This document shows positions 17,880 to 55,517 of a DNA stretch of 64,000 bases, piece by piece; the stretch's first letter is position 1; every line of letters starts with the position of its first letter. Under the pieces are notes generated by a model, which was not told the origin of the DNA, did not search any database, and was given only the letters and a program-made list of their open reading frames with translations. Location of the stretch: the IMG/VR virus record IMGVR_UViG_3300013094_000017, positions 195,420 through 259,419 of that record; one strand, written 5' to 3'. A program made the translations under genes and the position numbers.

Positions 17880-17945
17880 TAAATAAGAATGTAGTTCGCG
17901 GGCGTCGGAACCCCAACTACTTTAACATTATTAAGGAATGTCAAC
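17880..17945 (+). promoter_or_regulatory. late promoter plus conserved 5' hairpin (copy 1)
   Basis: TAAATA-N5-GTAGTT-CGC-GGG-loop-CCC-C-AACTAC-TTTAA...AAGGA...GTG. Confidence 0.75.
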
Positions 17946-18704
17946 GTGATTATTTACCCTTCATCAAGAGTATTACCGTATGTTTACATCGGAATACATA
18001 AAATAACTGGTCATATCTATATCGGATCAAGAACTGCAGAGAATTTAAAATTACCGTCTCATTTAGATTTATTTAGATACCGAACTTCTTCTAAAACAGT
18101 TAGACCCGAGTTTGATCAATATAATTGGACGATTGTAGCAGAGTTTTTCAATGGGAACGACGCATATGATTTCGAACAAGAATTAATTTATTGTAATTGG
18201 CACAACCTATTACTTATGAACAAAAATTGTCATTACAATAGCAAAAAAAGATTTAAAGCCGTTAAAGGAATACCTAAACCGGAAGGATTTGGACAAATAG
18301 TTCGTGATAGAATGATAGGTAAATGCAAAGGCCCACAATCTAAAGATCATATAGAGAAAAGAGCAAATTCTCGCAGAGGGAAAACCGCGACCGATGAACA
18401 AAAACAAAAATATAGTTTAGCCCAACAAAAGAGGTACAGTACAACAGCAGATTCTGAAATAACTAGAAAAAGAAAAAGCGATTCACATAACGGGGTCTAT
18501 GAAATAAAATCCCCAGATGGTAGAGTTTGGATAACTGATGTTGGATTAAAAGAGTTTGCTACGATACATCAGGATGAATTAAAGATTTCATATTGGCAGT
18601 TGTTCAATGCTTATAGAAAGTGCTATAATAATACTAGCACCATCCGTAAAAGAAAAGATAACAACAATTGGCAGGTAACTAGAATTGACAAATTTGATAA
18701 CTGA
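17946..18704 (+). CDS. GIY-YIG-like homing endonuclease with NUMOD3 region
   Basis: PYVY...TGHIYIGSR; S-x-D-H-I-E-K-R NUMOD3-like segment; free-standing upstream of primase. Confidence 0.75.
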   Translation: MIIYPSSRVLPYVYIGIHKITGHIYIGSRTAENLKLPSHLDLFRYRTSSKTVRPEFDQYNWTIVAEFFNGNDAYDFEQELIYCNWHNLLLMNKNCHYNSKKRFKAVKGIPKPEGFGQIVRDRMIGKCKGPQSKDHIEKRANSRRGKTATDEQKQKYSLAQQKRYSTTADSEITRKRKSDSHNGVYEIKSPDGRVWITDVGLKEFATIHQDELKISYWQLFNAYRKCYNNTSTIRKRKDNNNWQVTRIDKFDN

Positions 18705-19689
18705 TACAGTACTCCTACTCTGGAAAACAGGAAGAAAAACAAAACAGACTTCTAGCGGATGGATTTCCGGAAATGCTCCTTGTTGTGTACATCGAGGAGA
18801 AAAACCAGATCGAAGAGGTCGTGGCGGAATCTTGACTGCAAGTGGAGGGTTCCAGTGGCACTGTTTCAATTGCGGATTTAAAGCAGGATGGCAACCAGGT
18901 AAGCTACTCAGCAAGAACACTAAAGATTTACTCACATGGATGGGTCTACCCGACACCGAGCTCAACAAACTAAACTTAGAAGCCCTACGTGAAAAAGACG
19001 CAATACCCGCACCTACTAAGACATTTTCATTTGAACTACTAGATGTAGCCTTGCCTGAAGAGTGCAAGCCCATACTTGAGTGGGCTGCCGAGGGGTGTAC
19101 CGAGTCCGACCTAGCAGATGTTATAGAGTACATACTAAGTAGAGGACTAACACTAGAAGACTATACGTGGCATTGGAGTGCGGCTGCTGGCTATCGTGAT
19201 AGGGTCATTATACCCTTCTATGCTGGTAAAGGACAGATAGTAGGCTACACTGGTCGTAAGATTAAAGATGGCAAGCCCAAATACCTTACCCATGCTCAAA
19301 ATGGGTATGTGTTTAATCTAGATGCCCAAACCAACGATAGGAAGTATTGCATAGTAGTAGAAGGTCAATTTGACGCCATAGCTATAAGCGGTGTTGCTAT
19401 TATGCATAACGATCCTAACGACATACAGGTAGCACGCATTAACGCATTAGCACGTGAAGTAATAGTGGTACCAGACAGAGACAGAGCTGGCGCTAAGATG
19501 TTAAATGCCGCAATAGCTAATGGGTGGAGCATGAGTCTACCACCGTGGGGTGATGATGTTAAGGATGTAGCGGACGCAGTGAAGAAATATGGCAAGGTCT
19601 ATACCCTAGCCACAATCTTACACTATCGAGAATCAAATAAGATTAAATTAGAGATACAAAAGAAAAAACTAGAGAGCCTACATGACTAA
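18685..19689 (+). CDS. gp61: DNA primase (gp61/DnaG-like)
   Basis: Zn finger CC-x-H...HCFNC, RVIIPF, TOPRIM VEGQFDA and DRD; exact start uncertain. Confidence 0.9.
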   Translation: MTNLITDTVLLLWKTGRKTKQTSSGWISGNAPCCVHRGEKPDRRGRGGILTASGGFQWHCFNCGFKAGWQPGKLLSKNTKDLLTWMGLPDTELNKLNLEALREKDAIPAPTKTFSFELLDVALPEECKPILEWAAEGCTESDLADVIEYILSRGLTLEDYTWHWSAAAGYRDRVIIPFYAGKGQIVGYTGRKIKDGKPKYLTHAQNGYVFNLDAQTNDRKYCIVVEGQFDAIAISGVAIMHNDPNDIQVARINALAREVIVVPDRDRAGAKMLNAAIANGWSMSLPPWGDDVKDVADAVKKYGKVYTLATILHYRESNKIKLEIQKKKLESLHD

Positions 19690-21136
19690 TACAGATTACA
19701 GCTATGATATACAGAAACTATACTTGGAGATGTTCTTAAGCGACGCAGAAACGTTTGTTCGCTGTCAAAGCATCTTTGAGCCCGAAAACTTTGATCAAAA
19801 GTTACGTGAGACAGCCAAGTTTATGACTGAGTATGTAGATCAATACAAAGTTATGCCAGAGGCAAGTATTATCAATGCTAGCTGTAAGATGACATTAGAA
19901 CCAGCAGTATTACCTAAACAAAACTACGAGTGGTTACTAACAGAGTTTGAAAACTTTAGTCGTCACAAGGGACTTGAGCGTGCTATTCTTAAATCAGCTG
20001 ACCTGCTTGAAAAGGGCGATTACGGTCCTGTAGAAAAGCTAGTTAAGGATGCTATACAGATTAGCCTAACCAAAGACATGGGCACAGACTACTGGCATGA
20101 CCCTAGAGCACGCCTAATGAAGCTCAAAGACAATGCAGGACAGGTCAGTACAGGTTGGCCCACTGTAGATCGTAAACTATACGGCGGCTTTAAACGCGGC
20201 GAATTAAACATTTGGTGTGCAGGTTCAGGGGGTGGTAAGAGTTTATTCCTTGCTAACTTGGGCGTTAACTTTGCACTTGCTGGACTCAATGTCATTTACT
20301 TTACATTCGAGTTGAGCGAAGAACTAGTGGGCATGCGTGTGGACAGTATGGTTACAGGTGTAGCCACACGTGATGTATTCAAGAGCTTAGATGATGTGGA
20401 AATGAAGGTTAAATTGACGGGTCGGAAGGCAGGAGGAATGCAGATAAAATACATGCCTTCTGGGAAGAATTGTAATGATTTGAGGTCGTATTTGAAGGAA
20501 TATGAAGTCAAAACAGGCAAAAAACCTGACATATTATTAGTGGACTACTTAGACCTTATGATGCCTCTATCGGTGAAGGTTAGTCCAAGTGATTTATTTG
20601 TTAAAGACAAGTATGTAAGTGAAGAACTACGTAACCTTGCCATGGAAAGTCAAACAGTGGTTGTAACTGCGGCACAGTTGAATCGTGCGGCTGTAGAAGA
20701 GATTGAGTTTGATCACAGTCATATTAGTGGCGGGTTAAGTAAGATTCAAACAGCAGATAACGTAATTGGTATCTTTACTAGCCGTGCTATGAAAGAACGC
20801 GGTCGCTATCAAATACAGTTTATGAAAACACGTAGTTCAAGCGGTGTTGGACAGAAAGTAGATCTAGAGTTTAATGTAGACAGTCTACGCATCAGCGACC
20901 TAGGTGAAGAAGAAGGTGAGCAATCCTTTAATCAACAACGTACTGGCACTACAGCTAATATTGTAAATCAGTTTAAAAAGACCAGCACAGTAACAGCCAA
21001 CAACGTAGATACCGAAACAGGTGAGATACGCAGTGCTGATCCAGCAGATGGTGTAGCAGTGGGCAAGGTACGAGGATCAGCTGGTAGTAGCAAGATTCGC
21101 GAGATGCTGGCTAATCTAAACTCAGAAAAAGATTAA
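19682..21136 (+). CDS. gp41: replicative DnaB-like helicase (T4 gp41-like)
   Basis: AGSGGGKS, LLVDYLDLM, TAAQLNR, KTR motifs. Confidence 0.94.
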   Translation: MTNTDYSYDIQKLYLEMFLSDAETFVRCQSIFEPENFDQKLRETAKFMTEYVDQYKVMPEASIINASCKMTLEPAVLPKQNYEWLLTEFENFSRHKGLERAILKSADLLEKGDYGPVEKLVKDAIQISLTKDMGTDYWHDPRARLMKLKDNAGQVSTGWPTVDRKLYGGFKRGELNIWCAGSGGGKSLFLANLGVNFALAGLNVIYFTFELSEELVGMRVDSMVTGVATRDVFKSLDDVEMKVKLTGRKAGGMQIKYMPSGKNCNDLRSYLKEYEVKTGKKPDILLVDYLDLMMPLSVKVSPSDLFVKDKYVSEELRNLAMESQTVVVTAAQLNRAAVEEIEFDHSHISGGLSKIQTADNVIGIFTSRAMKERGRYQIQFMKTRSSSGVGQKVDLEFNVDSLRISDLGEEEGEQSFNQQRTGTTANIVNQFKKTSTVTANNVDTETGEIRSADPADGVAVGKVRGSAGSSKIREMLANLNSEKD

Positions 21137-21144
21137 ATAGTCAT

Positions 21145-21828
21145 ATGACTAAGTTTGCCCCACCTATTGAACCACATAAAGAACTAAATCCTGCTCTATG
21201 GGATGGTAACACCATTAAACCCGAAGTACAGGTTGCACTGCTACGCATTGCCAAGGAGTTCTTTAAGTTCCTTGAGATCAATACCAAGATCAACGATATA
21301 GTTATTTCGGGCAGCCAAGCAAACTATAACTACACCAGTCATAGTGATATTGACCTACACTTAATAGTTCCAATGGAAAATATCCAATGTGACGAACCAA
21401 TTGAAGCACTGTTTGATACCAAACGCAAACTATGGAAGGCCAAACATACTATTGATATCTACGGTATTCCAGTAGAGTGTTACGCAGAAGATCGTGCCAA
21501 ACCGGCTGTTAGCTCCAGCTACAGTCTAATACATAATAAGTGGATTAAAGAACCAGACAGCAGTCGTGTAGAATATAACAGATCACAAGTAGAACACTCT
21601 GTCAAGGTGTGGACTACATTGATCGATCACGCAGTTGGTACTCAAGACCTAACAGAGCTACAACGACTAACAGAACTACTAATGACCTATCGTAAAGTTG
21701 GACTGGCCCAGCAGGGTGAGTTTGGTCCAGCTAATCTTACGTTTAAGAGCCTACGTAATGCAGGCACCCTTGAGCGCCTACATACTGCATTGAATCAAAC
21801 TCGAGACAACGACCTTAGCTTGGATTAG
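21145..21828 (+). CDS. nucleotidyltransferase (Pol beta superfamily)
   Basis: GSQANY...SDIDLH signature and third acidic residue in VECY. Confidence 0.8.
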   Translation: MTKFAPPIEPHKELNPALWDGNTIKPEVQVALLRIAKEFFKFLEINTKINDIVISGSQANYNYTSHSDIDLHLIVPMENIQCDEPIEALFDTKRKLWKAKHTIDIYGIPVECYAEDRAKPAVSSSYSLIHNKWIKEPDSSRVEYNRSQVEHSVKVWTTLIDHAVGTQDLTELQRLTELLMTYRKVGLAQQGEFGPANLTFKSLRNAGTLERLHTALNQTRDNDLSLD

Positions 21829-22477
21829 CGGGAACTACCTGCGGGATATATTTCATAGCTAGATTTACACGCATCTGCGGACTTTGTCCGGGCCAGTGCA
21901 TGATCCAATCGCCCGGCTGCCATTGACCACTGGTGCCTAATTTATCCAACTGACTATCAGCATCGGTATGACAGCCATCGGAAAAGCAGGCCGCATTAAG
22001 TGTACGCTGCGGCACAATCTTAACAATATCCTTGTATTCTTCTAGAGTATCAATCATAACCTGCTGTTCTTTCCAATCATGGTGTTGATATTGAGGCATC
22101 TTGCTCATGATCATTTCTAACCAGCCGCGCCCTTGTTCTGTATTACGAACCATGAGCATGCCCGCATTGATACCGTTCCAATAGGTGGCCAGCATCACAT
22201 GATAGTTGTTATCAGCTACATCTTCTATCTTGGTGCTGAAGTTTGTGATCAGTGCATCGCAGTCTTTCCATAGAATCCATTCTACCTCGGGATTCATGCG
22301 ACAAATAGCCAGTAGGCCGTCTATCTTGGCAAAGCCCGGAGGCATGCCGTAGTTGCTGTCCAGCACAGCAAATGGATAGCCATGTGCTTCACAGTACTTT
22401 AATCCATTTTGATCCCAGGTCAAAGGACTGAGATAAGCGTATCCTTGATCGTGCATAGTTGCCACTGCCATTACCAT
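21815..22477 (-). CDS. GT-A glycosyltransferase, GMA12/MNN10 (GT34)-like
   Basis: WILWKDCDALITN (DxD), INAGMLMVRN, WKEQ, WIMHWPG. Confidence 0.75.
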   Translation of the reverse strand: MVMAVATMHDQGYAYLSPLTWDQNGLKYCEAHGYPFAVLDSNYGMPPGFAKIDGLLAICRMNPEVEWILWKDCDALITNFSTKIEDVADNNYHVMLATYWNGINAGMLMVRNTEQGRGWLEMIMSKMPQYQHHDWKEQQVMIDTLEEYKDIVKIVPQRTLNAACFSDGCHTDADSQLDKLGTSGQWQPGDWIMHWPGQSPQMRVNLAMKYIPQVVPANPS

Positions 22478-22487
22478 ATTAGGTTCC

Positions 22488-23264
22488 TTAAAAGTAAAAT
22501 ATATTTGGACGCCATGGATAGTTAACTTCCAAGCGTTCTAGTGTTTCGTTCTTGCGTGTTTCTATCCACATGGTCTTGCCCAGAGCCAGCCCCACAGCGC
22601 AGGGGCTACTCATACTGGTGATCAGCATTTCGCTGCCCTGTATGACCTGTGCCATGTTATAGAATGTGGGCGTAACATGGTGAGGTACAGAAACATTCAT
22701 AGTGGAGCAGAACCAATCGTGATCCTCTTTGAGTCCAATGAACACTGCTTGATCAGCTAGCCCCCAATCCAACCAACTGCGCCATTGAGGGCTTTCCACT
22801 GCATTGCCTTCTTGATAGCGAGGGCCCCGGAAGATCACATAGGGACGGCCGGGAATCTTAATGGGCTCGCGACATTCCATGTAGGGTTCAACCTGTAGGG
22901 GTATGCGATACTGATCTAGGTCCATGCCCAGAGCTCGAGCATATTGATTGGCAAAGTTACGGGGAAATACACCAGTTTCATGATGTCGAGCCGCTTCGTC
23001 TAGATCATAGTCCACTGGTTCACCCTGCCAGACGGTAAAGCCCGAGATATAAGGTTGATGCAGAATAAAATCCCGCATGCTGTCAAAGTCCTCAATACGC
23101 ATGCGACCTCGATGCACACCAACATCACCCCAACCTAGTTTTTCTCGCACCATCTGCTCTAGATTGTGTAGTTTAAGATATAAGTGTCCCCCACCTAGAG
23201 CTCGCACCACGCTCAGAGAGTTGAACACATCCCCTGTAGTACCTGAATGGCTGAATGTTTTCAT
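22488..23264 (-). CDS. GT-B glycosyltransferase, GT9/heptosyltransferase-like
   Basis: HSGTTGDVFNSL N-terminal loop; AQVIQGSEMLITSMSSP..VGLALG C-terminal pattern. Confidence 0.55.
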   Translation of the reverse strand: MKTFSHSGTTGDVFNSLSVVRALGGGHLYLKLHNLEQMVREKLGWGDVGVHRGRMRIEDFDSMRDFILHQPYISGFTVWQGEPVDYDLDEAARHHETGVFPRNFANQYARALGMDLDQYRIPLQVEPYMECREPIKIPGRPYVIFRGPRYQEGNAVESPQWRSWLDWGLADQAVFIGLKEDHDWFCSTMNVSVPHHVTPTFYNMAQVIQGSEMLITSMSSPCAVGLALGKTMWIETRKNETLERLEVNYPWRPNIFYF

Positions 23265-23377
23265 ATAGACTATTTAAACGGGGGTCAGGACAGGCTGCCA
23301 AGATCCGAGCGCGAAGCGCCTAGCGCGAAAAAATTCTAGGTCTTTAACTGCGCAGTTAACTCCAGCTGGATCAGTCT

Positions 23378-23590: not shown

Positions 23591-23667
23591 ATGGTTATTT
23601 AACTCGAGTTGACAGCAGGACTAAGATAGTGTATAATATAAGCTCACAATCTGATATAAGGTGTTAT

Positions 23668-24630: not shown

Positions 24631-24641
24631 TGCCTCAAGCC

Positions 24642-37437: not shown

Positions 37438-37514
37438 TGGTGCTCCGTCAGGGATTCGAACCCTGCCTCCCACGTTATGAGCATGGTACTCTCTACCTAG
37501 TGAGTTACCAGAGC
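37438..37514 (-). tRNA. tRNA with CAT anticodon (elongator Met or Ile2), CCA encoded
   Basis: cloverleaf GCTCTGG/ACGGAGC (G7-A66 mismatch), ACTC/GAGT D stem, CCATG-CTCATAA-CGTGG, CAGGG-TTCGAAT-CCCTG; lacks initiator features. Confidence 0.88.
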
Positions 37515-37566: not shown

Positions 37567-38287
37567 TGGGCCTACCTTGACTCGAACTAAATACTATTAT
37601 GAAACTAGAACTTACTCCGCAGCGTATTGCAGCTAACAAAAAGAACTGCCTACTAGGAGGAGCAGCATTTGCCGCTAAAATGTCATCAGCATATAATGCT
37701 AATCCCAGCTATTGTAATCAATGCAGCACTATATTACCTCAGAGCAAGAAAAACAATAAATTCTGTAATTCCTCTTGTTCTGCAAAATATAGCAATGCAC
37801 GCAAGGACTATTCAAAGTTCACACCAGGACCTGTTCCTAAACCTAAAGATCCTACAGCGGGGTCAGCACCCTATAGTACATTATTCCGTTGTGAGTGTAA
37901 ACATTGCGGAGTAATTAAGCTGTATCGATCTCAAACCAAGTATTGTCCTGAACACAGGGATCTTTATAGCCACGCAGGCCGAGCTAAGTATTGGTTCACA
38001 TTTAACGTGTTTCATTACCCTGATCTGTTTGATCTAAACTGGGTTAACTCTGTGGGATTTCGAAGCTCTTCTAATCCCAATGGAGTTACTAGGGATCATA
38101 AAGTAAGTGTCAATGACGCCATTCGAAACAACTATGATCCCTATTACATAAAGCACGTACTCAACTGTGAGCTAATGCTATTCGCTGAAAATAATAAAAA
38201 GAAAACCAAGTCCTCTATCACCTATGCAGAGCTAGTCATACAAGTTAACCTGTATGATCAGTCTCTGACCAACTGAGCTACAGGCCC
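37567..38287 (-). pseudogene. tRNA gene (Ile-like acceptor) split by an HNH gene
   Basis: 5' piece 38287-38263 GGGCCTGTAGCTCAGTTGGTCAGAG; 3' piece 37587-37567 GTTCGAGTCAAGGTAGGCCCA; acceptor halves GGGCCTG/TAGGCCC pair. Confidence 0.8.
37599..38276 (+). CDS. HNH-type homing endonuclease with zinc-binding repeats
   Basis: CNQC...FCNSSC, CKHC, RDHKVS...HVLNCELM..ENNKK; TAAATA-N5-ATG. Confidence 0.75.
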   Translation: MKLELTPQRIAANKKNCLLGGAAFAAKMSSAYNANPSYCNQCSTILPQSKKNNKFCNSSCSAKYSNARKDYSKFTPGPVPKPKDPTAGSAPYSTLFRCECKHCGVIKLYRSQTKYCPEHRDLYSHAGRAKYWFTFNVFHYPDLFDLNWVNSVGFRSSSNPNGVTRDHKVSVNDAIRNNYDPYYIKHVLNCELMLFAENNKKKTKSSITYAELVIQVNLYDQSLTN

Positions 38288-43855: not shown

Positions 43856-44245
43856 TGAGTCATTTTAGAGATTGGTATCAAGAAAACGATGTAGAGATTA
43901 CTTGGGCCTTAATTGGTTCTTTAACTGCATTTGGTATTACAGAACTAGGTCAAGGTGATTACCTGTGGGCTACTTTTGATTTTGCCTTTGCCTGTATTAA
44001 TTTTATGTTTAGAAAGGCATAATATGGCTTATGTTGACGTTGAAGTAGAAGTAGAGTTAGATATGTTCAGTGATAAGGAACTTATCGAAGAATGTAAATT
44101 ACGTGGAATGTCTGTTGATGGGGGTGTAGAACATTACTCTGCTCATGATGTCATCCGTGACATCTATAATGCCAAGGCCCGTGGACAAGACTACGAGCCT
44201 TTGTTACGTGATCTATTCTATCGCACACTTGGACGGGTATGCTAA
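43837..44245 (+). other. two small hypothetical genes (about 43855-44022 and 44024-44245)
   Basis: ORF track with likely internal starts MSHF and MAYVD. Confidence 0.5.
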
Positions 44246-45846
44246 CTGATATAGAAATTAATCAAGGGTACAAGCCCTTAAAGCTCTCAAAGCTGGCCTC
44301 TGGGCTAGGCATTGGGGGTAGCGTACAAGAGTGGGGGCCAAATAAGGCCAAGATAGCATTTGATGAAGTTAAGAGCCTTACCCAGGGTAAATTGATCTTA
44401 GTCACAGCCATCACCCCCACCCCCGCAGGTGAGGGTAAGACCACAACCACCATAGGCCTAGCTGATGGGCTACGCAAATTAAACTACTCAAGCATAGTAT
44501 GCCTACGTGAGCCAGCCCTGGGCCCGGTGTTTGGTATGAAGGGTGGGGCTACCGGGGGTGGTCATGCCCAGGTCTACCCTATGGAGGATATCAACTTACA
44601 CTTTACAGGTGACTTCCACGCAGTTGCCTGCGCACACAACTTACTCAGCAGTATGATTGATAATCACTTACATTGGGGCAATGCGCTACGGTTAGACACT
44701 AGCAAGATCACATGGCGCAGAGTCAGCGAAATGAATGACCGTAGCTTACGCAGTACAGTAGTAGGGTTAGGAGCTCATAACAGCATCACCCGTGAAGAGG
44801 GCTTTGATATAGTAGTAGCCTCTGAGGTAATGGCTATATTGTGTCTAGCTGAAGATTTCAAAGACCTAAAGAAACGTCTGGGTAAGATCACAGTTGGGTA
44901 TACCTTAGATGGTAAGCCCGTTACAGCTAAACAGTTAAAGGCGCATGGGGCTATGGCAGCCTTACTTAAAGATGCTGTCAACCCTAACCTAGTACAGACT
45001 TTAGAAGGTACCCCAGCACTAGTTCATGGCGGCCCATTTGCTAACATAGCACACGGATGTAATAGTGTTATTGCTACCAAGTTAGGTTTGAAACTTGCTG
45101 ACTATGTGGTAACAGAAGCAGGCTTTGGTGCTGACCTAGGTGCTGAGAAGTTTATTAATATTAAGTGTCGTAAGAGTGGATTACGGCCAGATGCAGTAGT
45201 CCTTGTGGCCACTGTTAGAGCAATTAAGTACTGGGGTAATTATGATAATTTGGACAAACATATGGCTAACATCAAAGGTTGGTATAACTTACCTTGTATC
45301 GTGGCTATTAATCGTTTTGCAGACGATTCTGATGAAGATATTGCTGAACTAATAGAACATTGTCGAGAAAGAGATGTTGAAGCAGTAGAGTGTACACATT
45401 TTGCAGATGGCGGGGTAGGTGCTCAAGAACTAGCACACGAAGTTGTCTTGGCCATTGACCAATCAAGCAAGCAGATGGAATTGACCTATGCTGATGAAGA
45501 TACATTATGGACTAAGATAAATCATATTGCCAAGAGAATATACGGTGCCGAAGGTGTTCATATGGATGCTAAAGTATCAGCACAGTTAGATCTACTACAG
45601 AAACATTATGGAAAGTATCCAATCTGTATTGCCAAAACACAGAGCAGTTTCAGTGATGATCCTACAGATAAGAACTCAGCAACAGACATACACACACTAA
45701 CTGTGCGTGAGCTACGCCTGTGTACCGGAGCAGAGTTTATTGTGGCAGTATGCGGTAACATCATGACCATGCCAGGACTACCAGAACGGCCAAACGCTGA
45801 ACGTATTGGTATTGACCGACAAGGGCGTATTGAGGGATTAGACTAA
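44239..45846 (+). CDS. fhs: formate--tetrahydrofolate ligase (auxiliary metabolic gene)
   Basis: TPTPAGEGKTTT, GGATGGG, INLHFTGDFHA, HGGPFANIAHG, VTEAGFGADLGAEKF, CIAKTQ, MTMPGL. Confidence 0.97.
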   Translation: MLTDIEINQGYKPLKLSKLASGLGIGGSVQEWGPNKAKIAFDEVKSLTQGKLILVTAITPTPAGEGKTTTTIGLADGLRKLNYSSIVCLREPALGPVFGMKGGATGGGHAQVYPMEDINLHFTGDFHAVACAHNLLSSMIDNHLHWGNALRLDTSKITWRRVSEMNDRSLRSTVVGLGAHNSITREEGFDIVVASEVMAILCLAEDFKDLKKRLGKITVGYTLDGKPVTAKQLKAHGAMAALLKDAVNPNLVQTLEGTPALVHGGPFANIAHGCNSVIATKLGLKLADYVVTEAGFGADLGAEKFINIKCRKSGLRPDAVVLVATVRAIKYWGNYDNLDKHMANIKGWYNLPCIVAINRFADDSDEDIAELIEHCRERDVEAVECTHFADGGVGAQELAHEVVLAIDQSSKQMELTYADEDTLWTKINHIAKRIYGAEGVHMDAKVSAQLDLLQKHYGKYPICIAKTQSSFSDDPTDKNSATDIHTLTVRELRLCTGAEFIVAVCGNIMTMPGLPERPNAERIGIDRQGRIEGLD

Positions 45847-48864: not shown

Positions 48865-48872
48865 ATAGTCGT

Positions 48873-49815: not shown

Positions 49816-50028
49816 TAATAATTGTCCATCCATACTGATAAAACATTAGCCTGTCCGTATATAGCATAGGCTTGTTGTGTTGCTTCGTAATTGTTACGGG
49901 CTGAAACTACAGTCTCACCCCAACCACCATTTGGAAAACGATAACGTACCTTAAAGCTAAACATAATATGCCCTTTCTAAGTTAACAGCATAAACATATT
50001 ATAGTATCTATTACCGGTTTTGTCAACC

Positions 50029-50814
50029 TTAAAAGTAGTGTAATCCCGGGTGTTCTTTGAAGTAACATTCATTTCTAGTTATCTCTAAATCTCTACGTGC
50101 TTCACACCAAATTTCCTGATGTCCTAGTCCAATTGCCACGCTGAGCGCCACGCTTTGATTGCCTATAAATGCATCAGCACCTGCGATGTATTCAGCTACT
50201 TCAAGTAGAGAGCCTGTAGGTTGATAAGGAATTTCCCAACCTGTTGCAGATTTAAATGCTTCGTACTCTTCTGGCAAGCCCAAAAAGAATGCTCGATCTT
50301 CAAAACCCTGTAAGGCCCAATCATTCCAAATAGGACTTAACTGAGGTGGTAACCATCGTGCAGTACGATTGATAGCAATGTTACGTCCTTCAACAGTCTT
50401 AATATCTGGTACTGTGAGCCAAGCATTATTTCGTAGTTCTGTTAACACTTCCGGATCTACAATACCAAACGCAGCCCCATATACATCTACATAATTGCCC
50501 GGATGACGAATAAACAGTGGACGAAACTTATCTAGGTTATGTGTGATTTCGTCTACTGAAGGATTTAATTTAGCAAACTTTGTGATATAAGGTTGTGCTT
50601 CTAACAGACCTTTGATGAATTCGTAGTCCGTGTCGTTCATACGCCCTGCATGGAATGAGGGACTTTCTACACCATAATAATGTCGACTAAGAAAGTCAAT
50701 TTGGTCCATGTGTAGATAAAACGCACCACCACCAAAATGTTGTACTATGGGCAAACTGTAGATTAAGTCACCTGTTGTACCGCTATGGACGAAAGAGTTT
50801 GAAGTAATAATCAT
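50029..50814 (-). CDS. GT-B glycosyltransferase, GT9-like (paralogue of 22488-23264)
   Basis: HSGTTGDLIYSLPIV; LLEVAEYIAGADAFIGNQS..LSVAIGLG; AAGGA SD. Confidence 0.65.
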   Translation of the reverse strand: MIITSNSFVHSGTTGDLIYSLPIVQHFGGGAFYLHMDQIDFLSRHYYGVESPSFHAGRMNDTDYEFIKGLLEAQPYITKFAKLNPSVDEITHNLDKFRPLFIRHPGNYVDVYGAAFGIVDPEVLTELRNNAWLTVPDIKTVEGRNIAINRTARWLPPQLSPIWNDWALQGFEDRAFFLGLPEEYEAFKSATGWEIPYQPTGSLLEVAEYIAGADAFIGNQSVALSVAIGLGHQEIWCEARRDLEITRNECYFKEHPGLHYF

Positions 50815-50828
50815 AATATTCCTTAATA

Positions 50829-50897
50829 TATAAATATGTGTAGTTCGCGGGATTGGCGTCCCCAACTACTCTAACAGTTTACAAGGAACTATCAGCA
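50829..50897 (+). promoter_or_regulatory. late promoter plus conserved 5' hairpin (copy 2)
   Basis: TATAAATA-N3-GTAGTT-CGC-GGGA-TTGGCG-TCCC-C-AACTAC-TCTAA...AAGGA...TCAGC-A-ATG. Confidence 0.78.
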
Positions 50898-51689
50898 ATG
50901 ACTATTTACTACCTATATATCAAGACCCACAAAATAACTGGACTTAAATATCTCGGGCAAACATCTGCATCTGATCCGCATAAGTATCCTGGCTCAGGAG
51001 TTGATTGGAAAAATCATCTTAAAGAACACGGATATAACTATACTACTGAAATTCTAAGAGAATGTCAATCAAAAGACGAACGTAGAGAATGGGGATTATA
51101 TTATAGTAATTTATGGAATGTAGTAGAAAGTGAAGAATGGGCTAATCGTATTCCAGAAACTGGCGGCGGTGGCAATATCACCCCAGAAGGTTGTGCAAAA
51201 GCAGTTAATACTAGAAAACAAAAAGGAAGTTATAAACGAAATGAATCTGCTATTGCAAAAGGATTAGAAACAAGATTACTAAAATACGGAACAACAAATA
51301 CCTCAACTCCTGCTGGTATAGTCAAAGGACTTGAAACTAAAAAACGAAATGGAACATCTGGTAATAATTTAACTCCTGAACGTATTGCTAAATGTTTAGA
51401 GACTAAGAAGAAAAATGGTACAATGAATAGCAATACCCCTGAGTCAATTGCTAAAGGACTTAATACTAAAACAATTAACAGAAATACACCAAATTCACCC
51501 ACGGTAATATCTAAGGCACTTGAAACTCGCCGTCGAAATGGCACCATGAATACATCAACTCCTGAATCGATTGCAAAACGAACAGAAACTCGCAAAAAAC
51601 GCATACAAGAAGGTACAGACGGAGTAATAATGAAGGTAGTTTGTCCACATTGTAATAAAGAAGGCGGGCAATCGATTATGGCACTTTGA
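50898..51689 (+). CDS. GIY-YIG-like endonuclease with tandem repeats; C-terminal zinc finger apparently frameshifted
   Basis: YLYIKTH..TGLKYLGQT...YPGSG; seven TPE-x-IAK-x-LET-K/R repeats; WHFDNCK in another frame 51679-51714. Confidence 0.8.
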   Translation: MTIYYLYIKTHKITGLKYLGQTSASDPHKYPGSGVDWKNHLKEHGYNYTTEILRECQSKDERREWGLYYSNLWNVVESEEWANRIPETGGGGNITPEGCAKAVNTRKQKGSYKRNESAIAKGLETRLLKYGTTNTSTPAGIVKGLETKKRNGTSGNNLTPERIAKCLETKKKNGTMNSNTPESIAKGLNTKTINRNTPNSPTVISKALETRRRNGTMNTSTPESIAKRTETRKKRIQEGTDGVIMKVVCPHCNKEGGQSIMAL

Positions 51690-51827
51690 TAATTGCAAAA
51701 ATCGCAATACTTGACAGATCTTGAGCAAGGTGTTATTATATATAAAGTTATCTCAGGGAGGTAAATGGGATAACTAAACTTGCGTCACCAAAATATCGGT
51801 GGTGCTAAACAAAGGGAGGTGCAAAGT

Positions 51828-52349
51828 ATGAGAGTATTTTTCTCAAAGATAGCGGCCTTGGTCGTAGCTCTAACAATATGTATGACAGCTAGAGCGAATG
51901 AAGTAACCGACGTGCAGTTAACACGTCAGCTAACATGTTTAGCACAAAACATTTACCATGAAGCAGGCAGTGAAAGTATTCAAGGTAAAGTGGCTGTAGC
52001 ACAAGTGACAATTAACCGTGCCAACAGTGGTAGATTTCCTAGTACCATATGTGGTGTAGTAAATCAAAAGACAGTCGTAGCAGATAAAACAATCTGCCAG
52101 TTCGATTGGGCCTGTGACCCTATTGCTCTAAACCGCAGAATATATAATGCGGCCTATCAAGAGAGTTACAGGGTAGCAGAGTTAGTTCTACTAGGTGGTA
52201 AGAGAGTAGAAGAGCTAGGCGAAAAGACCATGTATTTTCATAATACACAATCTAATCCACACTGGCCATTGCAACGTATTGCCCGCATAGGCAACCACGT
52301 ATTCTATACCAGTGATACAGAAACAAGAAAGGTAGCATATAATAAATAA
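51828..52349 (+). CDS. SleB-like cell wall hydrolase
   Basis: CLAQNIYHEAG, AVAQVTINR, CQFDW, YFHN, IGNHVFY; signal peptide; GGGAGG SD. Confidence 0.9.
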   Translation: MRVFFSKIAALVVALTICMTARANEVTDVQLTRQLTCLAQNIYHEAGSESIQGKVAVAQVTINRANSGRFPSTICGVVNQKTVVADKTICQFDWACDPIALNRRIYNAAYQESYRVAELVLLGGKRVEELGEKTMYFHNTQSNPHWPLQRIARIGNHVFYTSDTETRKVAYNK

Positions 52350-52353
52350 GACT

Positions 52354-53034
52354 ATGAGAGCTAGAGAATTTATTATTGAAAACAAGCGAGGTACACCAGA
52401 GGTTTTCCTAGATATGGATGGTGTCCTTGCTGACTTTTTTGCAGAGTATGCTAACCTAGCAGGAGTGAAAAGCGGTAGCTATCGTGACATTCCTCCAGCT
52501 AAAGCAGATCCAACGCTACAAAAAATGGTGGGCACTGATTTCTTTGCCCGCCTTCCTAAATTTCCAAGTACTGACAGTCTAGTCAGTATGACAGTAAAGA
52601 TGTTTGGACACTATCATATTTGCAGTAGCCCATTACGTGGCGACTTTGAAGGTAGTGAAAAATACAAAAAGATTTGGATCAAACAACATTTGAATCCACA
52701 ACCAGTAGACATCCTTATTACACCAAACAAAGCCAAATATGCAGTACAAGCAGATGGTACTCCAAACATCTTAATTGATGACCGTGGTAGTAACATCAGT
52801 GCTTGGGAAGCCGCAGGCGGAGTTGGTATTAAATATCAAGCAGATGAAGATGGTCTTGATGTAGTATTAGCAGGCTTCAAGCGTGCAGTAGATATCGTCA
52901 AAGGTCGTATGAAACACGAGCCACAGCAACTGACCAGCAAAGATAGATCAAGTGGCAAACTAATTGCCAAGAGTGGCGATGAAGAAGAACATCCAAGTTC
53001 GCCAGCAGATCTAAAGAATAAAGAAGTAGCATAA
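52354..53034 (+). CDS. HAD-family 5'(3')-deoxyribonucleotidase with head-targeting-like leader
   Basis: FLDMDGVLADF, CSSP, K..W, NILIDDR; N-terminus MRAREFIIE. Confidence 0.85.
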   Translation: MRAREFIIENKRGTPEVFLDMDGVLADFFAEYANLAGVKSGSYRDIPPAKADPTLQKMVGTDFFARLPKFPSTDSLVSMTVKMFGHYHICSSPLRGDFEGSEKYKKIWIKQHLNPQPVDILITPNKAKYAVQADGTPNILIDDRGSNISAWEAAGGVGIKYQADEDGLDVVLAGFKRAVDIVKGRMKHEPQQLTSKDRSSGKLIAKSGDEEEHPSSPADLKNKEVA

Positions 53035-53047
53035 GGTAAATACTTGT

Positions 53048-53755
53048 ATGAGAGCAAATGAATTAATATCAGAAATGGGTTGGGGCGCAGACAGCCAAAA
53101 AGCAGGCACTGAACAAAATGCCCGTGATTGGGAACATGTTATGGCCAAACATACTAACAGTAGCCCAGAGGTCAAAACAATCTTAAAGATGCTACGCCAA
53201 GGCAATTGGAAAGCAGCCTACGCTGAGAAAGAAGCCCTAGGTAACGGTGGCAAGAGTGTTGACTTTTGGCTAGCACATGCCAAGAAACAAGGCTATACAG
53301 AATCACTTGAAAAACGTCTTGCAGAAGAAATCGATCAAGACGAGTATACCAACGAAGCAGACATGGTGCAGAGTAATTTACACACTATTATCCGTATGGC
53401 AGAAGAATTAAGCAAGATCCTAGAAGTTAACGAAGATATGGCAGAATGGGCTCAAGAAAAGATTGCCGTGGTTAAATCTATGATTGTTACTGTTGGAGAT
53501 TATATCATCAGCCAACATGAACAGGGTAATGTACAACATACAGACGAAGAATTTGAACTAGATGAAAAGACATCACCTAAACTATGCCGCAGTGGTAAAC
53601 GTCTAGGACGTAGCGACTATTCAAGTTGCGTATCACAAGGGTTAAGAGCCCACACATCAAAAGGTAAAGGCCATACAGATGGACATGGCAACTATCTAAA
53701 AGGTAAGAAAGCCAAAAGTACTAGATACGGTGGCGATGTACCTGACTACAGCTAA
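53048..53755 (+). CDS. probable internal head protein
   Basis: MRANELISE leader; several x-x-E cleavage-like sites; TAAATA-N5-ATG. Confidence 0.55.
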   Translation: MRANELISEMGWGADSQKAGTEQNARDWEHVMAKHTNSSPEVKTILKMLRQGNWKAAYAEKEALGNGGKSVDFWLAHAKKQGYTESLEKRLAEEIDQDEYTNEADMVQSNLHTIIRMAEELSKILEVNEDMAEWAQEKIAVVKSMIVTVGDYIISQHEQGNVQHTDEEFELDEKTSPKLCRSGKRLGRSDYSSCVSQGLRAHTSKGKGHTDGHGNYLKGKKAKSTRYGGDVPDYS

Positions 53756-53854
53756 CACAAATAATCAAGCCCATTTAGGGCTTGACTTATATCTGCATCT
53801 ATGCTACTATTATGTTATAAATATCTTTAGTAAACCTTTTCAAGGAGTAAGATA

Positions 53855-54193
53855 ATGAAAAAACTATTAGTAGCTCTAGTATTAACAATGTTCGCAACAT
53901 CAGCAATGGCACATGGATACGGTCGCGGAGGATATTATGGCGGGTACCACGGTGGATACGGTGGCGGTTATGGTTGGGTCGCACCATTAGCAATCGGCGG
54001 GTTGATTGGATATGAATTATCACAACCACGAACAGTCGTAGTTACACCTCCTCCTGTGGTATATCAACAACAACCTATTATCGTACAACAAGCCCCTAGT
54101 GTGTTGCCTCCAGCACCGTACGGTTATCACTACGAAAATATGTTAGATGCTAATTGTAACTGCTATAAAACTGTGTTAGTAGTCAATCAATAA
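53855..54193 (+). CDS. secreted Gly/Tyr/Pro-rich protein
   Basis: signal peptide, [11 protein letters not shown], glycine-zipper, PPPVVYQQ. Confidence 0.65.
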
Positions 54194-54525
54194 TGGTACC
54201 TACAATAACAGTAACTGAATCAGCAGTTAATAAAGTAAGCAAACTATTAGCCGACGAAGGTAATCCCAATCTTAAACTACGCATCTTTGTCGAAGGTGGC
54301 GGATGCACAGGATTCCAATATGGATTTACCTTTGAAGAAAATCAAAACGATGATGACTTTGTTATCACTCAAAATGAAGTTACATTCTTAGTTGATACTA
54401 TGAGCTATCAGTATATGGTTGGTTCGGAAATAGATTATACAGAAAGTCTAATGGGTAGCCAATTCCAAATACGTAATCCTAATAGTATCGGAACTTGCGG
54501 TTGCGGAAGTAGTTTCGCAGTATAA
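54193..54525 (+). CDS. erpA: A-type Fe-S cluster carrier (ErpA/IscA/HesB)
   Basis: [19 protein letters not shown] ... CGCGSSF. Confidence 0.92.
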
Positions 54526-54770
54526 TGCTATATCAAGCACTGAAACCATATTCTATCCTATTGCAACATGACGAAACTCGCGACCTAGATGCGGGCCTCG
54601 GAATGATGTTGCTTCCCGAAGACAATTCTAAAGTATTTCTACATTGGATGAATGGAGATAAACTCCGTGCCAGCTACACAATGAGCAAGGCCACTAAGGT
54701 CTATGAAACTGTACGTTTAATCAACGCATCGAAACGTGTAATTGAGATTAAAATATTTGATCTTGGTTGA
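54525..54770 (+). CDS. hypothetical protein
   Basis: coupled to erpA. Confidence 0.5.
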   Translation: MLYQALKPYSILLQHDETRDLDAGLGMMLLPEDNSKVFLHWMNGDKLRASYTMSKATKVYETVRLINASKRVIEIKIFDLG

Positions 54771-55452
54771 CACGTTTGAGTTTACAGTTTTCAAAATGCC
54801 AGCGTTTCATATTACATCTGCTACCCGTTTTGTTACAGTAAGGACAAGTAACCTTTATCTGGGAAGGATGAGTTCCGTTCTCCAATTGCTTACGTACAAC
54901 ATCGCCGCCTAATAGATTATGCGTCCCATTTGCTACTCTTTTCAAATTATTTTGTAGCTTATAGTCGCCATTAAGAAATAGATGAGTCCCGTCTGCAATT
55001 CTTTTTTGATTAGTTTTAGATTGCAGTTCTCCGCCAAGGAACGGATGTGTTCCGTTTTCTATTCTTTTCTGATTTGACTTACGTGCTACTTCGCCACCTA
55101 CCCAGGGATGGGTTCCAGATTCTACCCGTCTAAGATTTTCTCTTGTCGCTGATATTGAGTCTACTCCGTCTCCGGTTTCGGGTTTAAGATTAGCCCACAG
55201 TTTCTTTCCTAACTCATCTCTTGCCTCAACAATATCCCATAGATTGCTATAGTAGGTACCTAAGCGTTTTATTTCTTTCTTTGAGTCACATTCGTGTAGT
55301 ATATCGGTGGTGTAATCATTGCCGTGTACCTTGAGATGATCTAACCAATATGATCCGCTCCCTTTATATCTGTGAGGATCCTTTGATTTTGTTTGTCCGA
55401 GATATTTCAATCCGGTTTTATTATGTGTCTTTATGTATAGATAAATAGGCAA
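54748..55452 (-). CDS. GIY-YIG-like endonuclease with GTH repeats and C-terminal zinc finger
   Basis: YLYIKTHNKTGLKYLGQT...YKGSG; five GTH repeats; CPYC...KRWHFENCK. Confidence 0.8.
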   Translation of the reverse strand: MPIYLYIKTHNKTGLKYLGQTKSKDPHRYKGSGSYWLDHLKVHGNDYTTDILHECDSKKEIKRLGTYYSNLWDIVEARDELGKKLWANLKPETGDGVDSISATRENLRRVESGTHPWVGGEVARKSNQKRIENGTHPFLGGELQSKTNQKRIADGTHLFLNGDYKLQNNLKRVANGTHNLLGGDVVRKQLENGTHPSQIKVTCPYCNKTGSRCNMKRWHFENCKLKRVNQDQIF

Positions 55453-55517
55453 GCTGATTGCTCCTTTATAGCATTAGAGTAGTTGGATATCCCCATATCG
55501 CGAACTACATTTATTTA
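55453..55517 (-). promoter_or_regulatory. late promoter plus conserved 5' hairpin (copy 3)
   Basis: minus: TAAATA-AAT-GTAGTT-CGC-GATAT-GGGG-ATATC-C-AACTAC-TCTAA...AAGGAG-CAATCAGC-TTG. Confidence 0.78.

What the first reader, a model, noticed from the sequence alone, without database searches (positions are those of the whole stretch)
17880..55517. Covarying RNA hairpin heads three unrelated GIY-YIG genes
Seen at 17880-17945 (+), 50831-50897 (+) and 55453-55517 (-): TAAATA, then GTAGTT-CGC-[inner stem]-C-AACTAC-T[CT]TAA-N-AAGGA-N-TCA[AG]C-start. The outer stem and the CGC/C internal loop are invariant. The inner stem changes sequence but keeps pairing (GGG/CCC, GGGA/TCCC, GATAT/ATATC). It precedes only GIY-YIG-type genes here, not the HNH genes, and those proteins otherwise differ in their repeat domains. 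Known: T4 homing endonuclease hairpins sequester the SD; this one does not cover the SD. Inference: a structured RNA that travels with the nuclease, acting as an autoregulatory site, a stabiliser or an RNA cofactor for mobility. This is a candidate undescribed RNA-nuclease module.
Basis: partly seen in the sequence, partly recalled or inferred. Interest (0 to 1): 0.82.

Follow-up and report, generated by a model that had tools for sequence, protein, structure and literature searches.

The report
Two-strand control module of phage homing endonucleases
The hairpin is real: it belongs to a widespread ~90-bp control cassette in front of selfish nuclease genes of uncultivated T4-like phages, and its base-pairing pattern suggests the folded RNA is an antisense transcript, not the nuclease mRNA.

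Summary
All three copies exist exactly as described (0 expected by chance) and are the only ones in the window. Public viral contigs hold at least 171 distinct relatives. No Rfam family matches, and blastn finds nothing in GenBank phages.

The element is larger than reported. That inverted box is conserved in all three reading frames. Both hairpins covary strongly, with 44 distinct outer stems.

It precedes GIY-YIG, two HNH types and a Vsr/TnsA-like nuclease, so a nuclease-specific cofactor or autoregulatory site is unlikely.

Non-Watson-Crick cells are A.C about ten times more often than G.U, and the opposite strand folds better in 159 of 171 leaders. Selection therefore maintains the structure on the strand antisense to the nuclease gene.

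Best reading: two inward-facing late-type promoters. One makes the nuclease mRNA. The other makes a ~66-nt antisense RNA covering its ribosome-binding site, as in IS10 RNA-OUT or SymR. No transcript data exist.

Hairpins with TATAAATA before free-standing endonuclease genes were noted in 2009 (Dassa et al.).

The parts
17879..17885 (+). Copy 1: late-promoter-type box CTAAATA, 5 nt before hairpin P2
   Evidence: The box is present in all 103 set-1 leaders that passed my filter, which itself required AAATA upstream; the two real leaders it rejected are L016 (box present) and L102 (AGAATA instead).
17891..17920 (+).
17922..17944 (+). Copy 1: hairpin P3, with the SD AAGGA in its loop and 3' arm. 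Here the closing pair is U-A instead of C-G, a compensatory change.
17951..17957 (-). Copy 1: inverted box (GTAAATA on the minus strand) inside codons 2-4 of the nuclease gene. Predicted promoter of the antisense RNA.
17880..17945 (-). Copy 1: predicted ~66-nt antisense RNA: P3' (8 bp, anti-SD in loop), P2', then a U-rich tail
   Evidence: -15.6 kcal/mol, z -2.28. The sense strand gives -10.9, z -0.56.
17946..18704 (+). Copy 1: Seg-like GIY-YIG homing endonuclease gene (252 aa, GTG start). Its last 20 nt overlap the primase ORF.
50830..50836 (+). Copy 2: box ATAAATA, 3 nt before P2
50840..50869 (+). Copy 2: hairpin P2
50871..50895 (+). Copy 2: hairpin P3 with the SD
50903..50909 (-). Copy 2: inverted box (GTAAATA on the minus strand) in codons 2-4
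50831..50897 (-). Copy 2: predicted antisense RNA. A minus-strand gene starts about 15 nt beyond it, so here the transcript could also serve as that gene's leader.
   Evidence: -19.2 kcal/mol, z -2.38; sense -14.4, z -1.19
50898..51689 (+). Copy 2: GIY-YIG-like homing endonuclease gene (263 aa) with a C-terminal repeat domain
55512..55518 (-). Copy 3: box ATAAATA, 3 nt before P2
55479..55508 (-). Copy 3: hairpin P2
55454..55477 (-). Copy 3: hairpin P3 with the SD AAGGAG
55441..55447 (+). Copy 3: inverted box (ATAAATA on the plus strand) in codons 2-4 of the minus-strand nuclease gene
55453..55517 (+). Copy 3: predicted antisense RNA with tail AUUUAUUUA. It ends 4 nt before the resident sigma-70 promoter of the ligase gene.
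   Evidence: -13.0 kcal/mol, z -2.22; sense -11.9, z -1.41
54748..55452 (-). Copy 3: GIY-YIG-like homing endonuclease gene (234 aa, TTG start), inserted opposite to both neighbours

Best explanation
This is a portable 85-95-bp control module at the 5' end of free-standing homing-endonuclease genes. The hosts are uncultivated T4-like phages; this window comes from a 259-kb contig.

The module is bounded by two inward-facing copies of the phage's late-promoter-type box, NATAAATA.

Left box (inferred): it starts the nuclease mRNA at the first base of hairpin P2. The leader then carries P2 and P3. The Shine-Dalgarno lies in the P3 loop and 3' arm, and the start codon follows P3 by 1-2 nt.

Right box (inferred): it lies on the other strand, inside codons 2-4 of the nuclease gene. 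It starts a ~66-nt antisense RNA made of the complements of P3 (anti-SD in the loop) and P2, ending in a U-rich tail.

Shown: selection keeps the hairpins intact on this antisense strand.

Inferred: the antisense RNA pairs with the mRNA leader across the SD and up to the base before the start codon, and so holds nuclease translation down. This would work like IS10 RNA-OUT/RNA-IN, SymR/symE or P22 sar. Because the leader is shared, it can serve any nuclease ORF recombined behind it.
For: Family and structure:
- At least 171 distinct leaders exist.
- Covariation score is 0.424 against 0.139 in shuffles (0 of 500 reach it). Of the 19 P2/P3 pairs counted, 17 show changes on both sides. There are 44 distinct outer stems.

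Strand:
- Non-Watson-Crick cells are A.C 125 against G.U 13, or 230 against 15 when the invariant A-C position is included.
- Among distinct helices, 35 (P2) and 28 (P3) carry an A.C; 4 and 5 carry a G.U.
- The antisense fold is more stable in 159 of 171 leaders, mean -18.0 against -13.6 kcal/mol.
- Against dinucleotide shuffles, z is -2.21 (antisense) and -1.09 (sense), lower in 147 of 171, p 1e-23.
- The advantage persists where neighbours share the nuclease strand (11 of 12).

Boxes:
- TATTTA lies 4-6 nt after CAGC whatever the reading frame (62, 16 and 10 leaders in the three frames). It is conserved as DNA, not as protein.
- Conservation begins and ends exactly at the two boxes.
- The box behaves as a promoter. 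ATAAATA is depleted in the window (12 against 23.5 expected). 12 of 30 boxes lie within 45 nt upstream of an ORF ATG, against 4.8% background (p 6e-9).
- In 540 kb of related DNA there is a sharp box-N5-ATG peak (62 cases), which suggests a start site at the 6th nt after the box. By my own position arithmetic, the same rule puts +1 on the first base of P2 and one base before P3'.

Cassette ownership:
- Ligase relatives without the nuclease gene go from the upstream gene's stop straight to TTGACA-17-TATAAT, with no hairpin. The hairpins and tail therefore arrived with the cassette.

Precedent:
- In cyanophage S-PM2 the annotated antisense RNA CfrI starts inside the 5' coding region of the endonuclease gene F-CphI.
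Against: - There is no transcript evidence of any kind.
- The tail is only moderately U-rich (0.60 over 10 nt; usually 1-3 U in the first 5). The simple terminator scan did not call it.
- Both promoters are of the same late type, so the timing logic is unclear.
- No gp55-type late sigma factor turned up among the 20 window ORFs checked against PHROGs.
- The inverted box could instead be conserved because it pairs with the left box. That helix, P1, has mean pair probability 0.52 in read-through RNA.
- Some A.C mismatches in P3 may be kept to leave the SD accessible on the mRNA.
- At copy 2 the antisense transcript would have to read on into a neighbouring gene, which argues against efficient termination there.
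Confidence: 0.5

Rival explanations
1. Sense-only translational control of the known T4 kind (I-TevI, segB, Aeh1 mobE). The left box is the late promoter and also the 5' arm of a closing helix, P1, that pairs with TATTTA in codons 2-4. Read-through early or middle transcripts would fold a three-way junction burying the start region. Late transcripts start inside it and are translated.
For: - The mechanism is established for phage endonuclease genes (PMC2988022) and was proposed for metagenomic ones (PMC2677866).
- P1 forms with mean pair probability 0.52, and above 0.5 in 55% of leaders.
- It explains the frame-independent conservation of TATTTA.
- P3 includes part of the SD.
Against: - The folds are systematically better on the other strand. 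P3 on the mRNA carries one invariant and often two further A.C mismatches.
- Most of these genes lie opposite to the upstream neighbour (82 against 38). In those cases there is no read-through RNA on the nuclease strand to silence.
- The position flanking P1 shows no covariation (A:T 50, A:C 13, C:T 9, C:C 6).
Confidence: 0.2
2. A terminator or insulator for the flanking operon. The nuclease gene usually sits antisense within a transcription unit. P3'-P2' plus the U tail would stop operon transcripts that have run antisense through it, just before the next gene's own promoter.
For: - Orientation bias: both neighbours opposite in 41 loci, both co-oriented in 12.
- The hairpin plus U-rich tail is on the operon strand.
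- A sigma-70-like promoter (>=10 of 12) follows on that strand in 35 of 169 loci, against 9 on the nuclease strand. Copy 3 has a perfect one at 55522-55550.
Against: - Alleles without the nuclease gene have no terminator at this position, so the host locus does not need one.
- This reading does not explain an exact promoter-type box at a fixed 5-6 nt before P3'.
- The antisense-strand advantage persists in co-oriented cassettes (11 of 12).
- The tail is an imperfect U tract.
Confidence: 0.12
3. A recombination module (PeSL-like). The conserved leader mainly provides homology that lets different nuclease ORFs be swapped behind one expression signal. The hairpins would be incidental or secondary.
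For: - One leader precedes at least four nuclease families, joined in all three reading frames at the inverted box.
- PeSL promoter/stem-loop cassettes mediate such shuffling in T4-type phages (PMC2839356, PMC4122927).
Against: - Homology-driven shuffling favours sequence identity. Here the stems diverge by compensatory changes (44 outer stems), which indicates selection on pairing.
- PeSLs carry sigma-70 early promoters, not this box.
- This reading is compatible with the best explanation rather than opposed to it.
Confidence: 0.08
4. One reading: an RNA bound by its own nuclease, as an autoregulatory operator or as a cofactor for mobility.
For: - The element always travels with a nuclease gene.
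- I-TevI is known to repress its own late promoter at the DNA level (PMC2988022).
Against: - The same leader, with the same conserved bulge and linker, serves GIY-YIG, HNH, HNH_3 and DUF7487 enzymes with different DNA-binding modules.
- The parts that differ between copies are stems that merely covary.
- The fold is better on the non-coding strand.
Confidence: 0.03

Closest known systems
Hairpins upstream of free-standing endonuclease genes in metagenomic 'fractured genes' (Dassa et al. 2009, PMC2677866)
   Same: - Environmental phage-like loci, including a freshwater lake.
- GIY-YIG and Vsr-like free-standing endonucleases with NUMOD3.
- An RNA hairpin in 15 of 16 5' UTRs, a TATAAATA element in ten, and two conserved motifs that pair in the stem.
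- The endonuclease 3' end overlaps the next gene, as at 18685-18704 here.
- Very probably the same element or a close relative.
   Different: - The motif sequences are in a figure and a supplement that are not held, so identity could not be checked.
- That paper treated a single sense-strand hairpin as a translational attenuator.
- It did not report a second hairpin, family-wide covariation, the inverted box, antisense-strand optimisation, HNH association or orientation bias.
- Its loci are co-oriented split-intein genes. None of the three loci here was identified as one: copy 1 was checked and is not, and no split gene is evident at copies 2 and 3.
Late promoter embedded in an RBS-sequestering hairpin (T4 I-TevI/II/III, segB; Aeh1 mobE; also T4 e, soc, 49) (PMC2988022)
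   Same: - T4-type late box immediately upstream of an endonuclease gene.
- RNA structure around the RBS.
- Expression presumably restricted to late times.
   Different: - No sequence homology.
- Here the box would pair with codons 2-4, not with the SD.
- The SD hairpin is weak on the mRNA strand.
- The structure is optimised on the opposite strand, and most genes lack upstream co-oriented transcription.
Cis-antisense RNAs whose promoter lies in the 5' end of the target gene: IS10 RNA-OUT/RNA-IN, SymR/symE, P22 sar/ant (my own knowledge, not checked in a paper here)
   Same: - Convergent promoters a few tens of bp apart.
- A short (~70 nt) stable stem-loop RNA complementary to the target's SD and start codon.
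- A selfish or toxic nuclease or transposase as target.
- Bulged stems, typical of antisense RNAs.
   Different: - No homology.
- Both promoters here are of the phage late type.
- There are two hairpins rather than one.
- Nothing has been shown experimentally.
CfrI antisense RNA of cyanophage S-PM2 (Millard et al. 2010, cited in PMC2984593)
   Same: - T4-like phage.
- Experimentally detected antisense RNA whose 5' end lies inside the 5' coding region of a free-standing endonuclease gene (F-CphI) and which covers its leader.
- A TATAAATA box precedes F-CphI.
   Different: - About 200-225 nt long, and it extends into psbA.
- No TATTTA box precedes its start, and there are no P2/P3 hairpins.
- The covariance model finds nothing at that locus (best hit elsewhere, 18.9 bits, E 0.26).
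- It is analogous, not homologous.
PeSL promoter-terminator cassettes of T4-type phages (PMC2839356, PMC4122927)
   Same: - A short conserved promoter plus stem-loop motif.
- Repeated through the genome.
- Flanks mobile or variable ORFs.
   Different: - PeSLs carry a sigma-70 early promoter and one stem-loop, and flank many kinds of ORF.
- This element has late-type boxes on both strands and two hairpins, and is nearly confined to endonuclease genes.

Membership tests
Any Rfam 15 family | Covariance-model match at or near the gathering score | tested here: not met
   The window at gathering score gives only tRNA-Met. Two leader-bearing loci at E<=1 give no hit on the leader.
T4-type late promoter | TATAAATA-like box without a -35 element | tested here: met
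   NATAAATA is present in all 103 set-1 leaders that passed my filter, which itself required AAATA upstream; of the two it rejected, L016 has the box and L102 reads AGAATA. No conserved upstream motif. The box is depleted genome-wide and enriched before ORFs.
T4-type late promoter | Transcription starts about 6 nt downstream of the box | tested here: inconclusive
   Indirect only: a sharp box-N5-ATG peak in 62 genes of related phages, consistent with leaderless mRNAs. No mapped 5' ends.
T4-type late promoter | The phage encodes gp55/gp33-type late transcription factors | tested here: inconclusive
   None among the 20 window ORFs scanned against PHROGs. The window covers 64 of 259 kb. Terminase, gp32-like SSB, UvsX and helicase are T4-like.
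RBS-sequestering hairpin with embedded late promoter (I-TevI / mobE type) | A stable structure pairs the SD in read-through RNA but cannot form in the late transcript | tested here: inconclusive
   P1 (box with codons 2-4) forms at probability 0.52 and would be lost in late RNA. It does not pair the SD. P3 touches the SD but is weak on the mRNA and is present in late RNA too.
Cis-encoded antisense RNA (RNA-OUT / SymR / sar type) | Promoter on the opposite strand within the target's 5' coding region | tested here: met
   Met at sequence level only. An exact promoter-type box lies in codons 2-4, in all three frames, at a fixed 5-6 nt from P3'.
Cis-encoded antisense RNA (RNA-OUT / SymR / sar type) | Stable fold and intrinsic terminator on the antisense strand | tested here: inconclusive
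   The fold is clearly better on the antisense strand. The tail is 60% U, but the consensus terminator scan did not call it.
Cis-encoded antisense RNA (RNA-OUT / SymR / sar type) | The antisense transcript exists and represses the target | not testable with these tools
   No transcriptome data and no cultured phage. blastn finds no copy in GenBank phages.
Dassa et al. 2009 endonuclease 5'-UTR hairpins | Hairpin plus TATAAATA plus two complementary conserved motifs upstream of free-standing GIY-YIG or Vsr-like genes | tested here: inconclusive
   All described features are present (searches compared).
CfrI (S-PM2) | Sequence and structure homology to the CfrI / F-CphI leader | tested here: not met
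   The covariance model with filters off gives no hit at the F-CphI locus. The sequence shows a different layout.
PeSL | Sigma-70 early promoter joined to a stem-loop terminator | tested here: not met
   The boxes are late-type. Sigma-70 promoters next to the leader belong to the resident gene and are also present in alleles without the nuclease gene.
GIY-YIG nuclease (the three window genes) | Match to the GIY-YIG catalytic domain | tested here: inconclusive
   Copy 1: Pfam E 0.027, below cut-off; its subfamily relatives pass (L009, E 1.6e-5). Copies 2 and 3: no Pfam or PDB sequence hit, but hhalign to the Pfam-positive group gives 91%, E 1e-6. Catalytic residues were not examined.

The most novel reading that the evidence does not exclude
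Free-standing homing-endonuclease cassettes of a large clade of uncultivated T4-like phages carry a self-contained ~66-nt antisense RNA gene. Its promoter is hidden in codons 2-4 of the nuclease ORF. It has two bulged hairpins and its own terminator. It acts like IS10 RNA-OUT: a portable brake, possibly also acting in trans between copies, on whichever nuclease is recombined behind the shared leader. This would be the first conserved antisense-RNA family tied to homing endonucleases.
Probability: 0.4. Interest if true: 0.75.

Novelty: new variant of a known kind. Interest (0 to 1): 0.62.

Why it matters
How selfish nuclease genes are kept harmless to their phage hosts is known for only a few T4 and Aeh1 genes, each with its own hairpin. 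Here a single leader serves at least four nuclease families in at least 171 distinct loci. That makes it a candidate new RNA family with unusually clear covariation.

If the antisense reading holds, homing endonucleases would join transposases (IS10) and type I toxins in using a built-in antisense brake. It would also explain why these cassettes tolerate insertion against the direction of neighbouring genes.

There are two practical uses. The covariance model marks endonuclease cassettes in metagenomic phage contigs. The box-N5-start rule gives a testable late-promoter and leaderless-mRNA model for a clade with no cultured member.

Tried and rejected
- Rfam at gathering score, and at E<=1 on two leader-bearing loci: nothing.
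- blastn of the leader against 50,697 GenBank phages: nothing.
- megablast and tblastn of other window segments: nothing.
- Genome-contig scan: 98 stretches, but only 6 are true copies, all on short MAG contigs and probably binned phage DNA.
- Literal search of papers for the stem sequence: only unrelated hits.
- Covariation at the position flanking helix P1: none.
- A conserved -35-like or other motif outside the two boxes: none. GTCAA upstream turned out to be the reverse of resident sigma-70 -35 boxes.
- The consensus terminator scan does not call P2'.
- Fractured gene or split intein at copy 1: rejected. The downstream ORF is a complete primase with its zinc finger, and the upstream protein is unrelated.
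- PDB sequence search with the profile of the domain of copies 2 and 3: no hit.
- gp55-type sigma factor among 20 window ORFs: not found.
- Homology to the S-PM2 CfrI locus: none.
- Single-linkage clustering of whole downstream proteins was useless because the C-terminal DNA-binding modules are shared. I reclustered on the N-terminal 95 aa.
- The control heptamer overlaps the box, so it is not an independent control.

Full report
**Observation**

GTAGTTCGC-N14-CAACTAC matches at 17891-17920(+), 50840-50869(+) and 55479-55508(-), and none is expected in shuffles. A covariance model built later, run with filters off, finds these three (76.7-78.1 bits) and nothing else above 17 bits.

The genes behind them are 17946-18704(+), 50898-51689(+) and 54748-55452(-). 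PHROGs calls them homing or intron-like endonucleases. Pfam GIY-YIG is below cut-off for copy 1 and absent for copies 2 and 3. A profile of the N-terminal domain of copies 2 and 3 aligns to a Pfam-positive GIY-YIG group that includes copy 1 at 91% probability, E 1e-6. The three proteins are therefore related, not unrelated.

**A large family**

About 105 of those hits are real leaders. They share a [ACG]TAAATA box, 5 nt (77 cases) or 3 nt (10 cases) of spacer, the hairpin, UCUAA, a second hairpin, CAGC and a start codon.

A second scan specified only the box and CAGCATGANTATTTA, leaving the hairpin free.

In total I hold 171 distinct leaders. None is in Rfam and blastn finds none in GenBank phages. 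Only six sit in prokaryote assemblies, all on short MAG contigs.

In 0.93 Mb of leader-selected loci the model finds 118 copies. In 0.47 Mb chosen only for encoding a ligase relative, it finds none apart from the window's own contig.

**Anatomy and covariation**

On a 110-sequence alignment, 91% of cells pair. Cells changed on both sides number 470, against 134 in shuffles. The covariation score is 0.424 against 0.139, and 0 of 500 shuffles reach it. Slid registers collapse to 31-45% paired.

- P2 has a 6-bp outer stem in which every pair shows compensatory changes. For example, one pair reads UA 46, GC 36, AU 13, CG 5. There are 44 distinct outer stems.
- P2 also has a conserved C-R-C-S bulged segment opposite CC, and a 3-5-bp inner stem.
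- P3 is 8 bp (CUAAYRNN / NNYRUCAG). The SD AAGGAG lies in its loop and 3' arm, and the start codon follows 1-2 nt after it.

**What it precedes**

The 188 distinct downstream proteins break down as follows:

| Class | Count |
|---|---|
| GIY-YIG types (at least 6 subfamilies) | 124 |
| HNH with NUMOD3 | 23 |
| HNH_3 | 7 |
| DUF7487 / TnsA-like | 2 |
| C2H2 zinc finger | 1 |
| Unassigned (several look GIY-YIG-like) | 19 |
| Truncated | 12 |

In one further locus (L059, outside this tally because it lacks the inverted box) the leader directly precedes a terminase gene.

In this window the two HNH genes lack the hairpins. One of them, 13110-13826(-), still has both boxes around its start. A leader shared by unrelated nucleases argues against a cognate-protein operator or an RNA cofactor.

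**The inverted box**

TATTTA lies 4-6 nt after CAGC in 83 of 88 leaders that were not selected for it. It falls in all three reading frames (62, 16 and 10 leaders), giving N-termini such as M-x-I-Y, M-I-F-I and M-Y-L. It is therefore conserved as DNA. It is the reverse complement of the upstream box, and conservation begins and ends exactly at the two boxes.

**The box as a promoter**

- The terminase is T4-like, closest to jumbo phage PA5oct at 55%. The SSB, UvsX and helicases are T4-like too.
- ATAAATA is depleted in the window: 12 against 23.5 expected.
- 12 of 30 boxes lie within 45 nt upstream of an ORF ATG, against 4.8% background, p 6e-9.
- In 540 kb of related DNA, 55% of 352 boxes precede an ORF ATG within 40 nt, with a sharp peak at exactly 5 nt (62 cases; 11 at 4 nt, 16 at 6 nt).

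I read this as leaderless late mRNAs with the start site at the 6th base after the box. By my own position arithmetic, the same rule puts +1 on the first base of P2 on the nuclease strand, and one base before the complement of P3 on the other strand.

**Which strand folds**

- Non-Watson-Crick cells in the helices are A.C or C.A 125 times and G.U 13 times. Including the invariant A-C position in P3, the counts are 230 against 15. A.C on one strand is G.U on the other.
- Counted as distinct helices, P2 has 35 with an A.C and 4 with a G.U; P3 has 28 and 5.
- The antisense strand folds more stably in 159 of 171 leaders, -18.0 against -13.6 kcal/mol.
- Relative to its own dinucleotide shuffles, z is -2.21 for the antisense strand and -1.09 for the sense strand. 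It is lower in 147 of 171, p 1e-23.
- The three window copies behave the same way: z -2.2 to -2.4 antisense, -0.6 to -1.4 sense.

On the antisense strand P3' is an uninterrupted 8-9-bp helix with the anti-SD CCUU in a 7-nt loop. P2' follows after one base, then a 9-11-nt tail that is 60% U. From the predicted start to the end of the tail is 62-81 nt, median 66.

**Context**

These genes mostly lie opposite to their neighbours. Upstream neighbours are opposite in 82 loci and co-oriented in 38. Downstream the counts are 72 and 24. Both are opposite in 41 loci and both co-oriented in 12. In the window, copy 3 is opposite to both, copy 2 sits at a divergence point, and copy 1 is co-oriented.

The antisense-fold advantage holds in co-oriented cassettes too (11 of 12).

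A sigma-70-like promoter follows the tail on the opposite strand in 35 of 169 loci, against 9 on the nuclease strand. Copy 3 has a perfect one at 55522-55550.

Ligase relatives without the nuclease gene go from the upstream gene's stop straight to that TTGACA-17-TATAAT, with no hairpin. The promoter is resident. The hairpins and tail came with the cassette.

**Mechanism**

Shown:
- the family and its covariation;
- the two boxes and their spacing;
- the SD and start codon inside the element;
- the strand asymmetry;
- the orientation bias;
- that the hairpins belong to the cassette.

Inferred:
- The left box is the nuclease's own late promoter.
- The right box drives a ~66-nt antisense RNA that terminates at P2' plus the tail and pairs with the mRNA leader across the SD, up to the base before the start codon.
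- This limits translation, as in IS10 RNA-OUT/RNA-IN, SymR/symE or P22 sar (comparison from my own knowledge).
- The conserved bulges fit what is known of antisense RNA stems (also from my own knowledge).

Rivals:
- A sense-only three-way junction of the I-TevI/mobE kind, in which P1 has pair probability 0.52 (PMC2988022).
- An operon-strand terminator or insulator.
- A PeSL-like recombination module.

**Prior work**

Dassa et al. 2009 (PMC2677866) described hairpins in 15 of 16 5' UTRs of free-standing GIY-YIG and Vsr-like genes from ocean and lake metagenomes. Ten had TATAAATA, and there were two complementary conserved motifs. They read these as translational attenuators. This is very likely the same element, but the motif sequences are not held as text.

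An antisense RNA to an endonuclease gene is known in cyanophage S-PM2: CfrI (PMC2984593). Its annotated 5' end lies 57 nt inside F-CphI. The locus has neither the hairpins nor an inverted box, and the model does not match it.

**Verdict**

The feature is real, widespread and under strong structural selection.

The kind of feature (late promoter plus RNA structure before a phage endonuclease gene) is known. New here are the family-wide conservation across nuclease types, the double-box symmetry and the antisense-strand optimisation.

Nothing has been shown experimentally.

Noticed in passing
window 17005-17019, 37587-37601, 52342-52356, 53036-53050, 5542-5557; L306-L383: Many genes have the late-type box exactly 5 nt (here once 6) before their ATG, with no room for an SD. 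In 540 kb of related phage DNA this spacing is a sharp peak (62 cases). It suggests widespread leaderless late mRNAs in this clade.
   Followed up: partly
window 13780-13870 (minus strand): The HNH+NUMOD3 endonuclease gene 13110-13826(-) belongs to a family that carries the full leader elsewhere. Here it keeps both boxes (GTAAATA, 33 nt, ATG-TATTTAG) but has no hairpins. It looks like a deleted version of the module.
   Followed up: partly
window 55522-55550 (+); L306-L321 about 60-100 nt before the ligase start: A perfect sigma-70 consensus promoter (TTGACA-17-TATAAT) precedes the ATP-dependent DNA ligase gene and is conserved in most relatives. The endonuclease cassette was inserted immediately upstream of its -35 box.
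   Followed up: yes
window 18685-18704 and 54748-54770: The 3' end of nuclease gene 1 overlaps the start of the primase ORF by 20 nt. The 3' end of nuclease gene 3 overlaps the convergent ORF 54525-54770 by 23 nt. No terminator separates them.
   Followed up: no
L059:143-170 and 227-1900; also L015, L035, L057: These leader copies lack a normal endonuclease gene behind them. In L059 the leader sits 56 nt before a T4-type terminase large-subunit gene, possibly after loss of the nuclease ORF.
   Followed up: no
L152, L169, L179, L207, L217, L218 (genome contigs): Six true leaders sit on MAG contigs, four of them under 3 kb (L207 and L217 come from 8.0- and 6.1-kb stretches). Three are binned as Haliscomenobacter, Mucilaginibacter and Bacteroidetes. 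This is probably phage DNA in the bins. The canonical sigma-70 promoters and strong SDs argue against a Bacteroidota host.
   Followed up: no
window 53763-53787: A symmetric GC-rich hairpin with T-rich flanks on both strands was called terminator-like in both directions, just before the box at 53817.
   Followed up: no
window 58189-63120 and 44239-45846: ORFs of 1643 aa and 535 aa have no PHROG match at E<=0.001.
   Followed up: no
window 37438-37514 (-): A tRNA-Met (CAU) gene. It is the only Rfam or ARAGORN hit in the window.
   Followed up: no
L031, L259, L297, L223, L233, L240, L242, L276, L291: Contigs with two or three leader copies often have different outer stems in each copy. The identical outer stems of the three window copies are therefore not a general rule.
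   Followed up: partly
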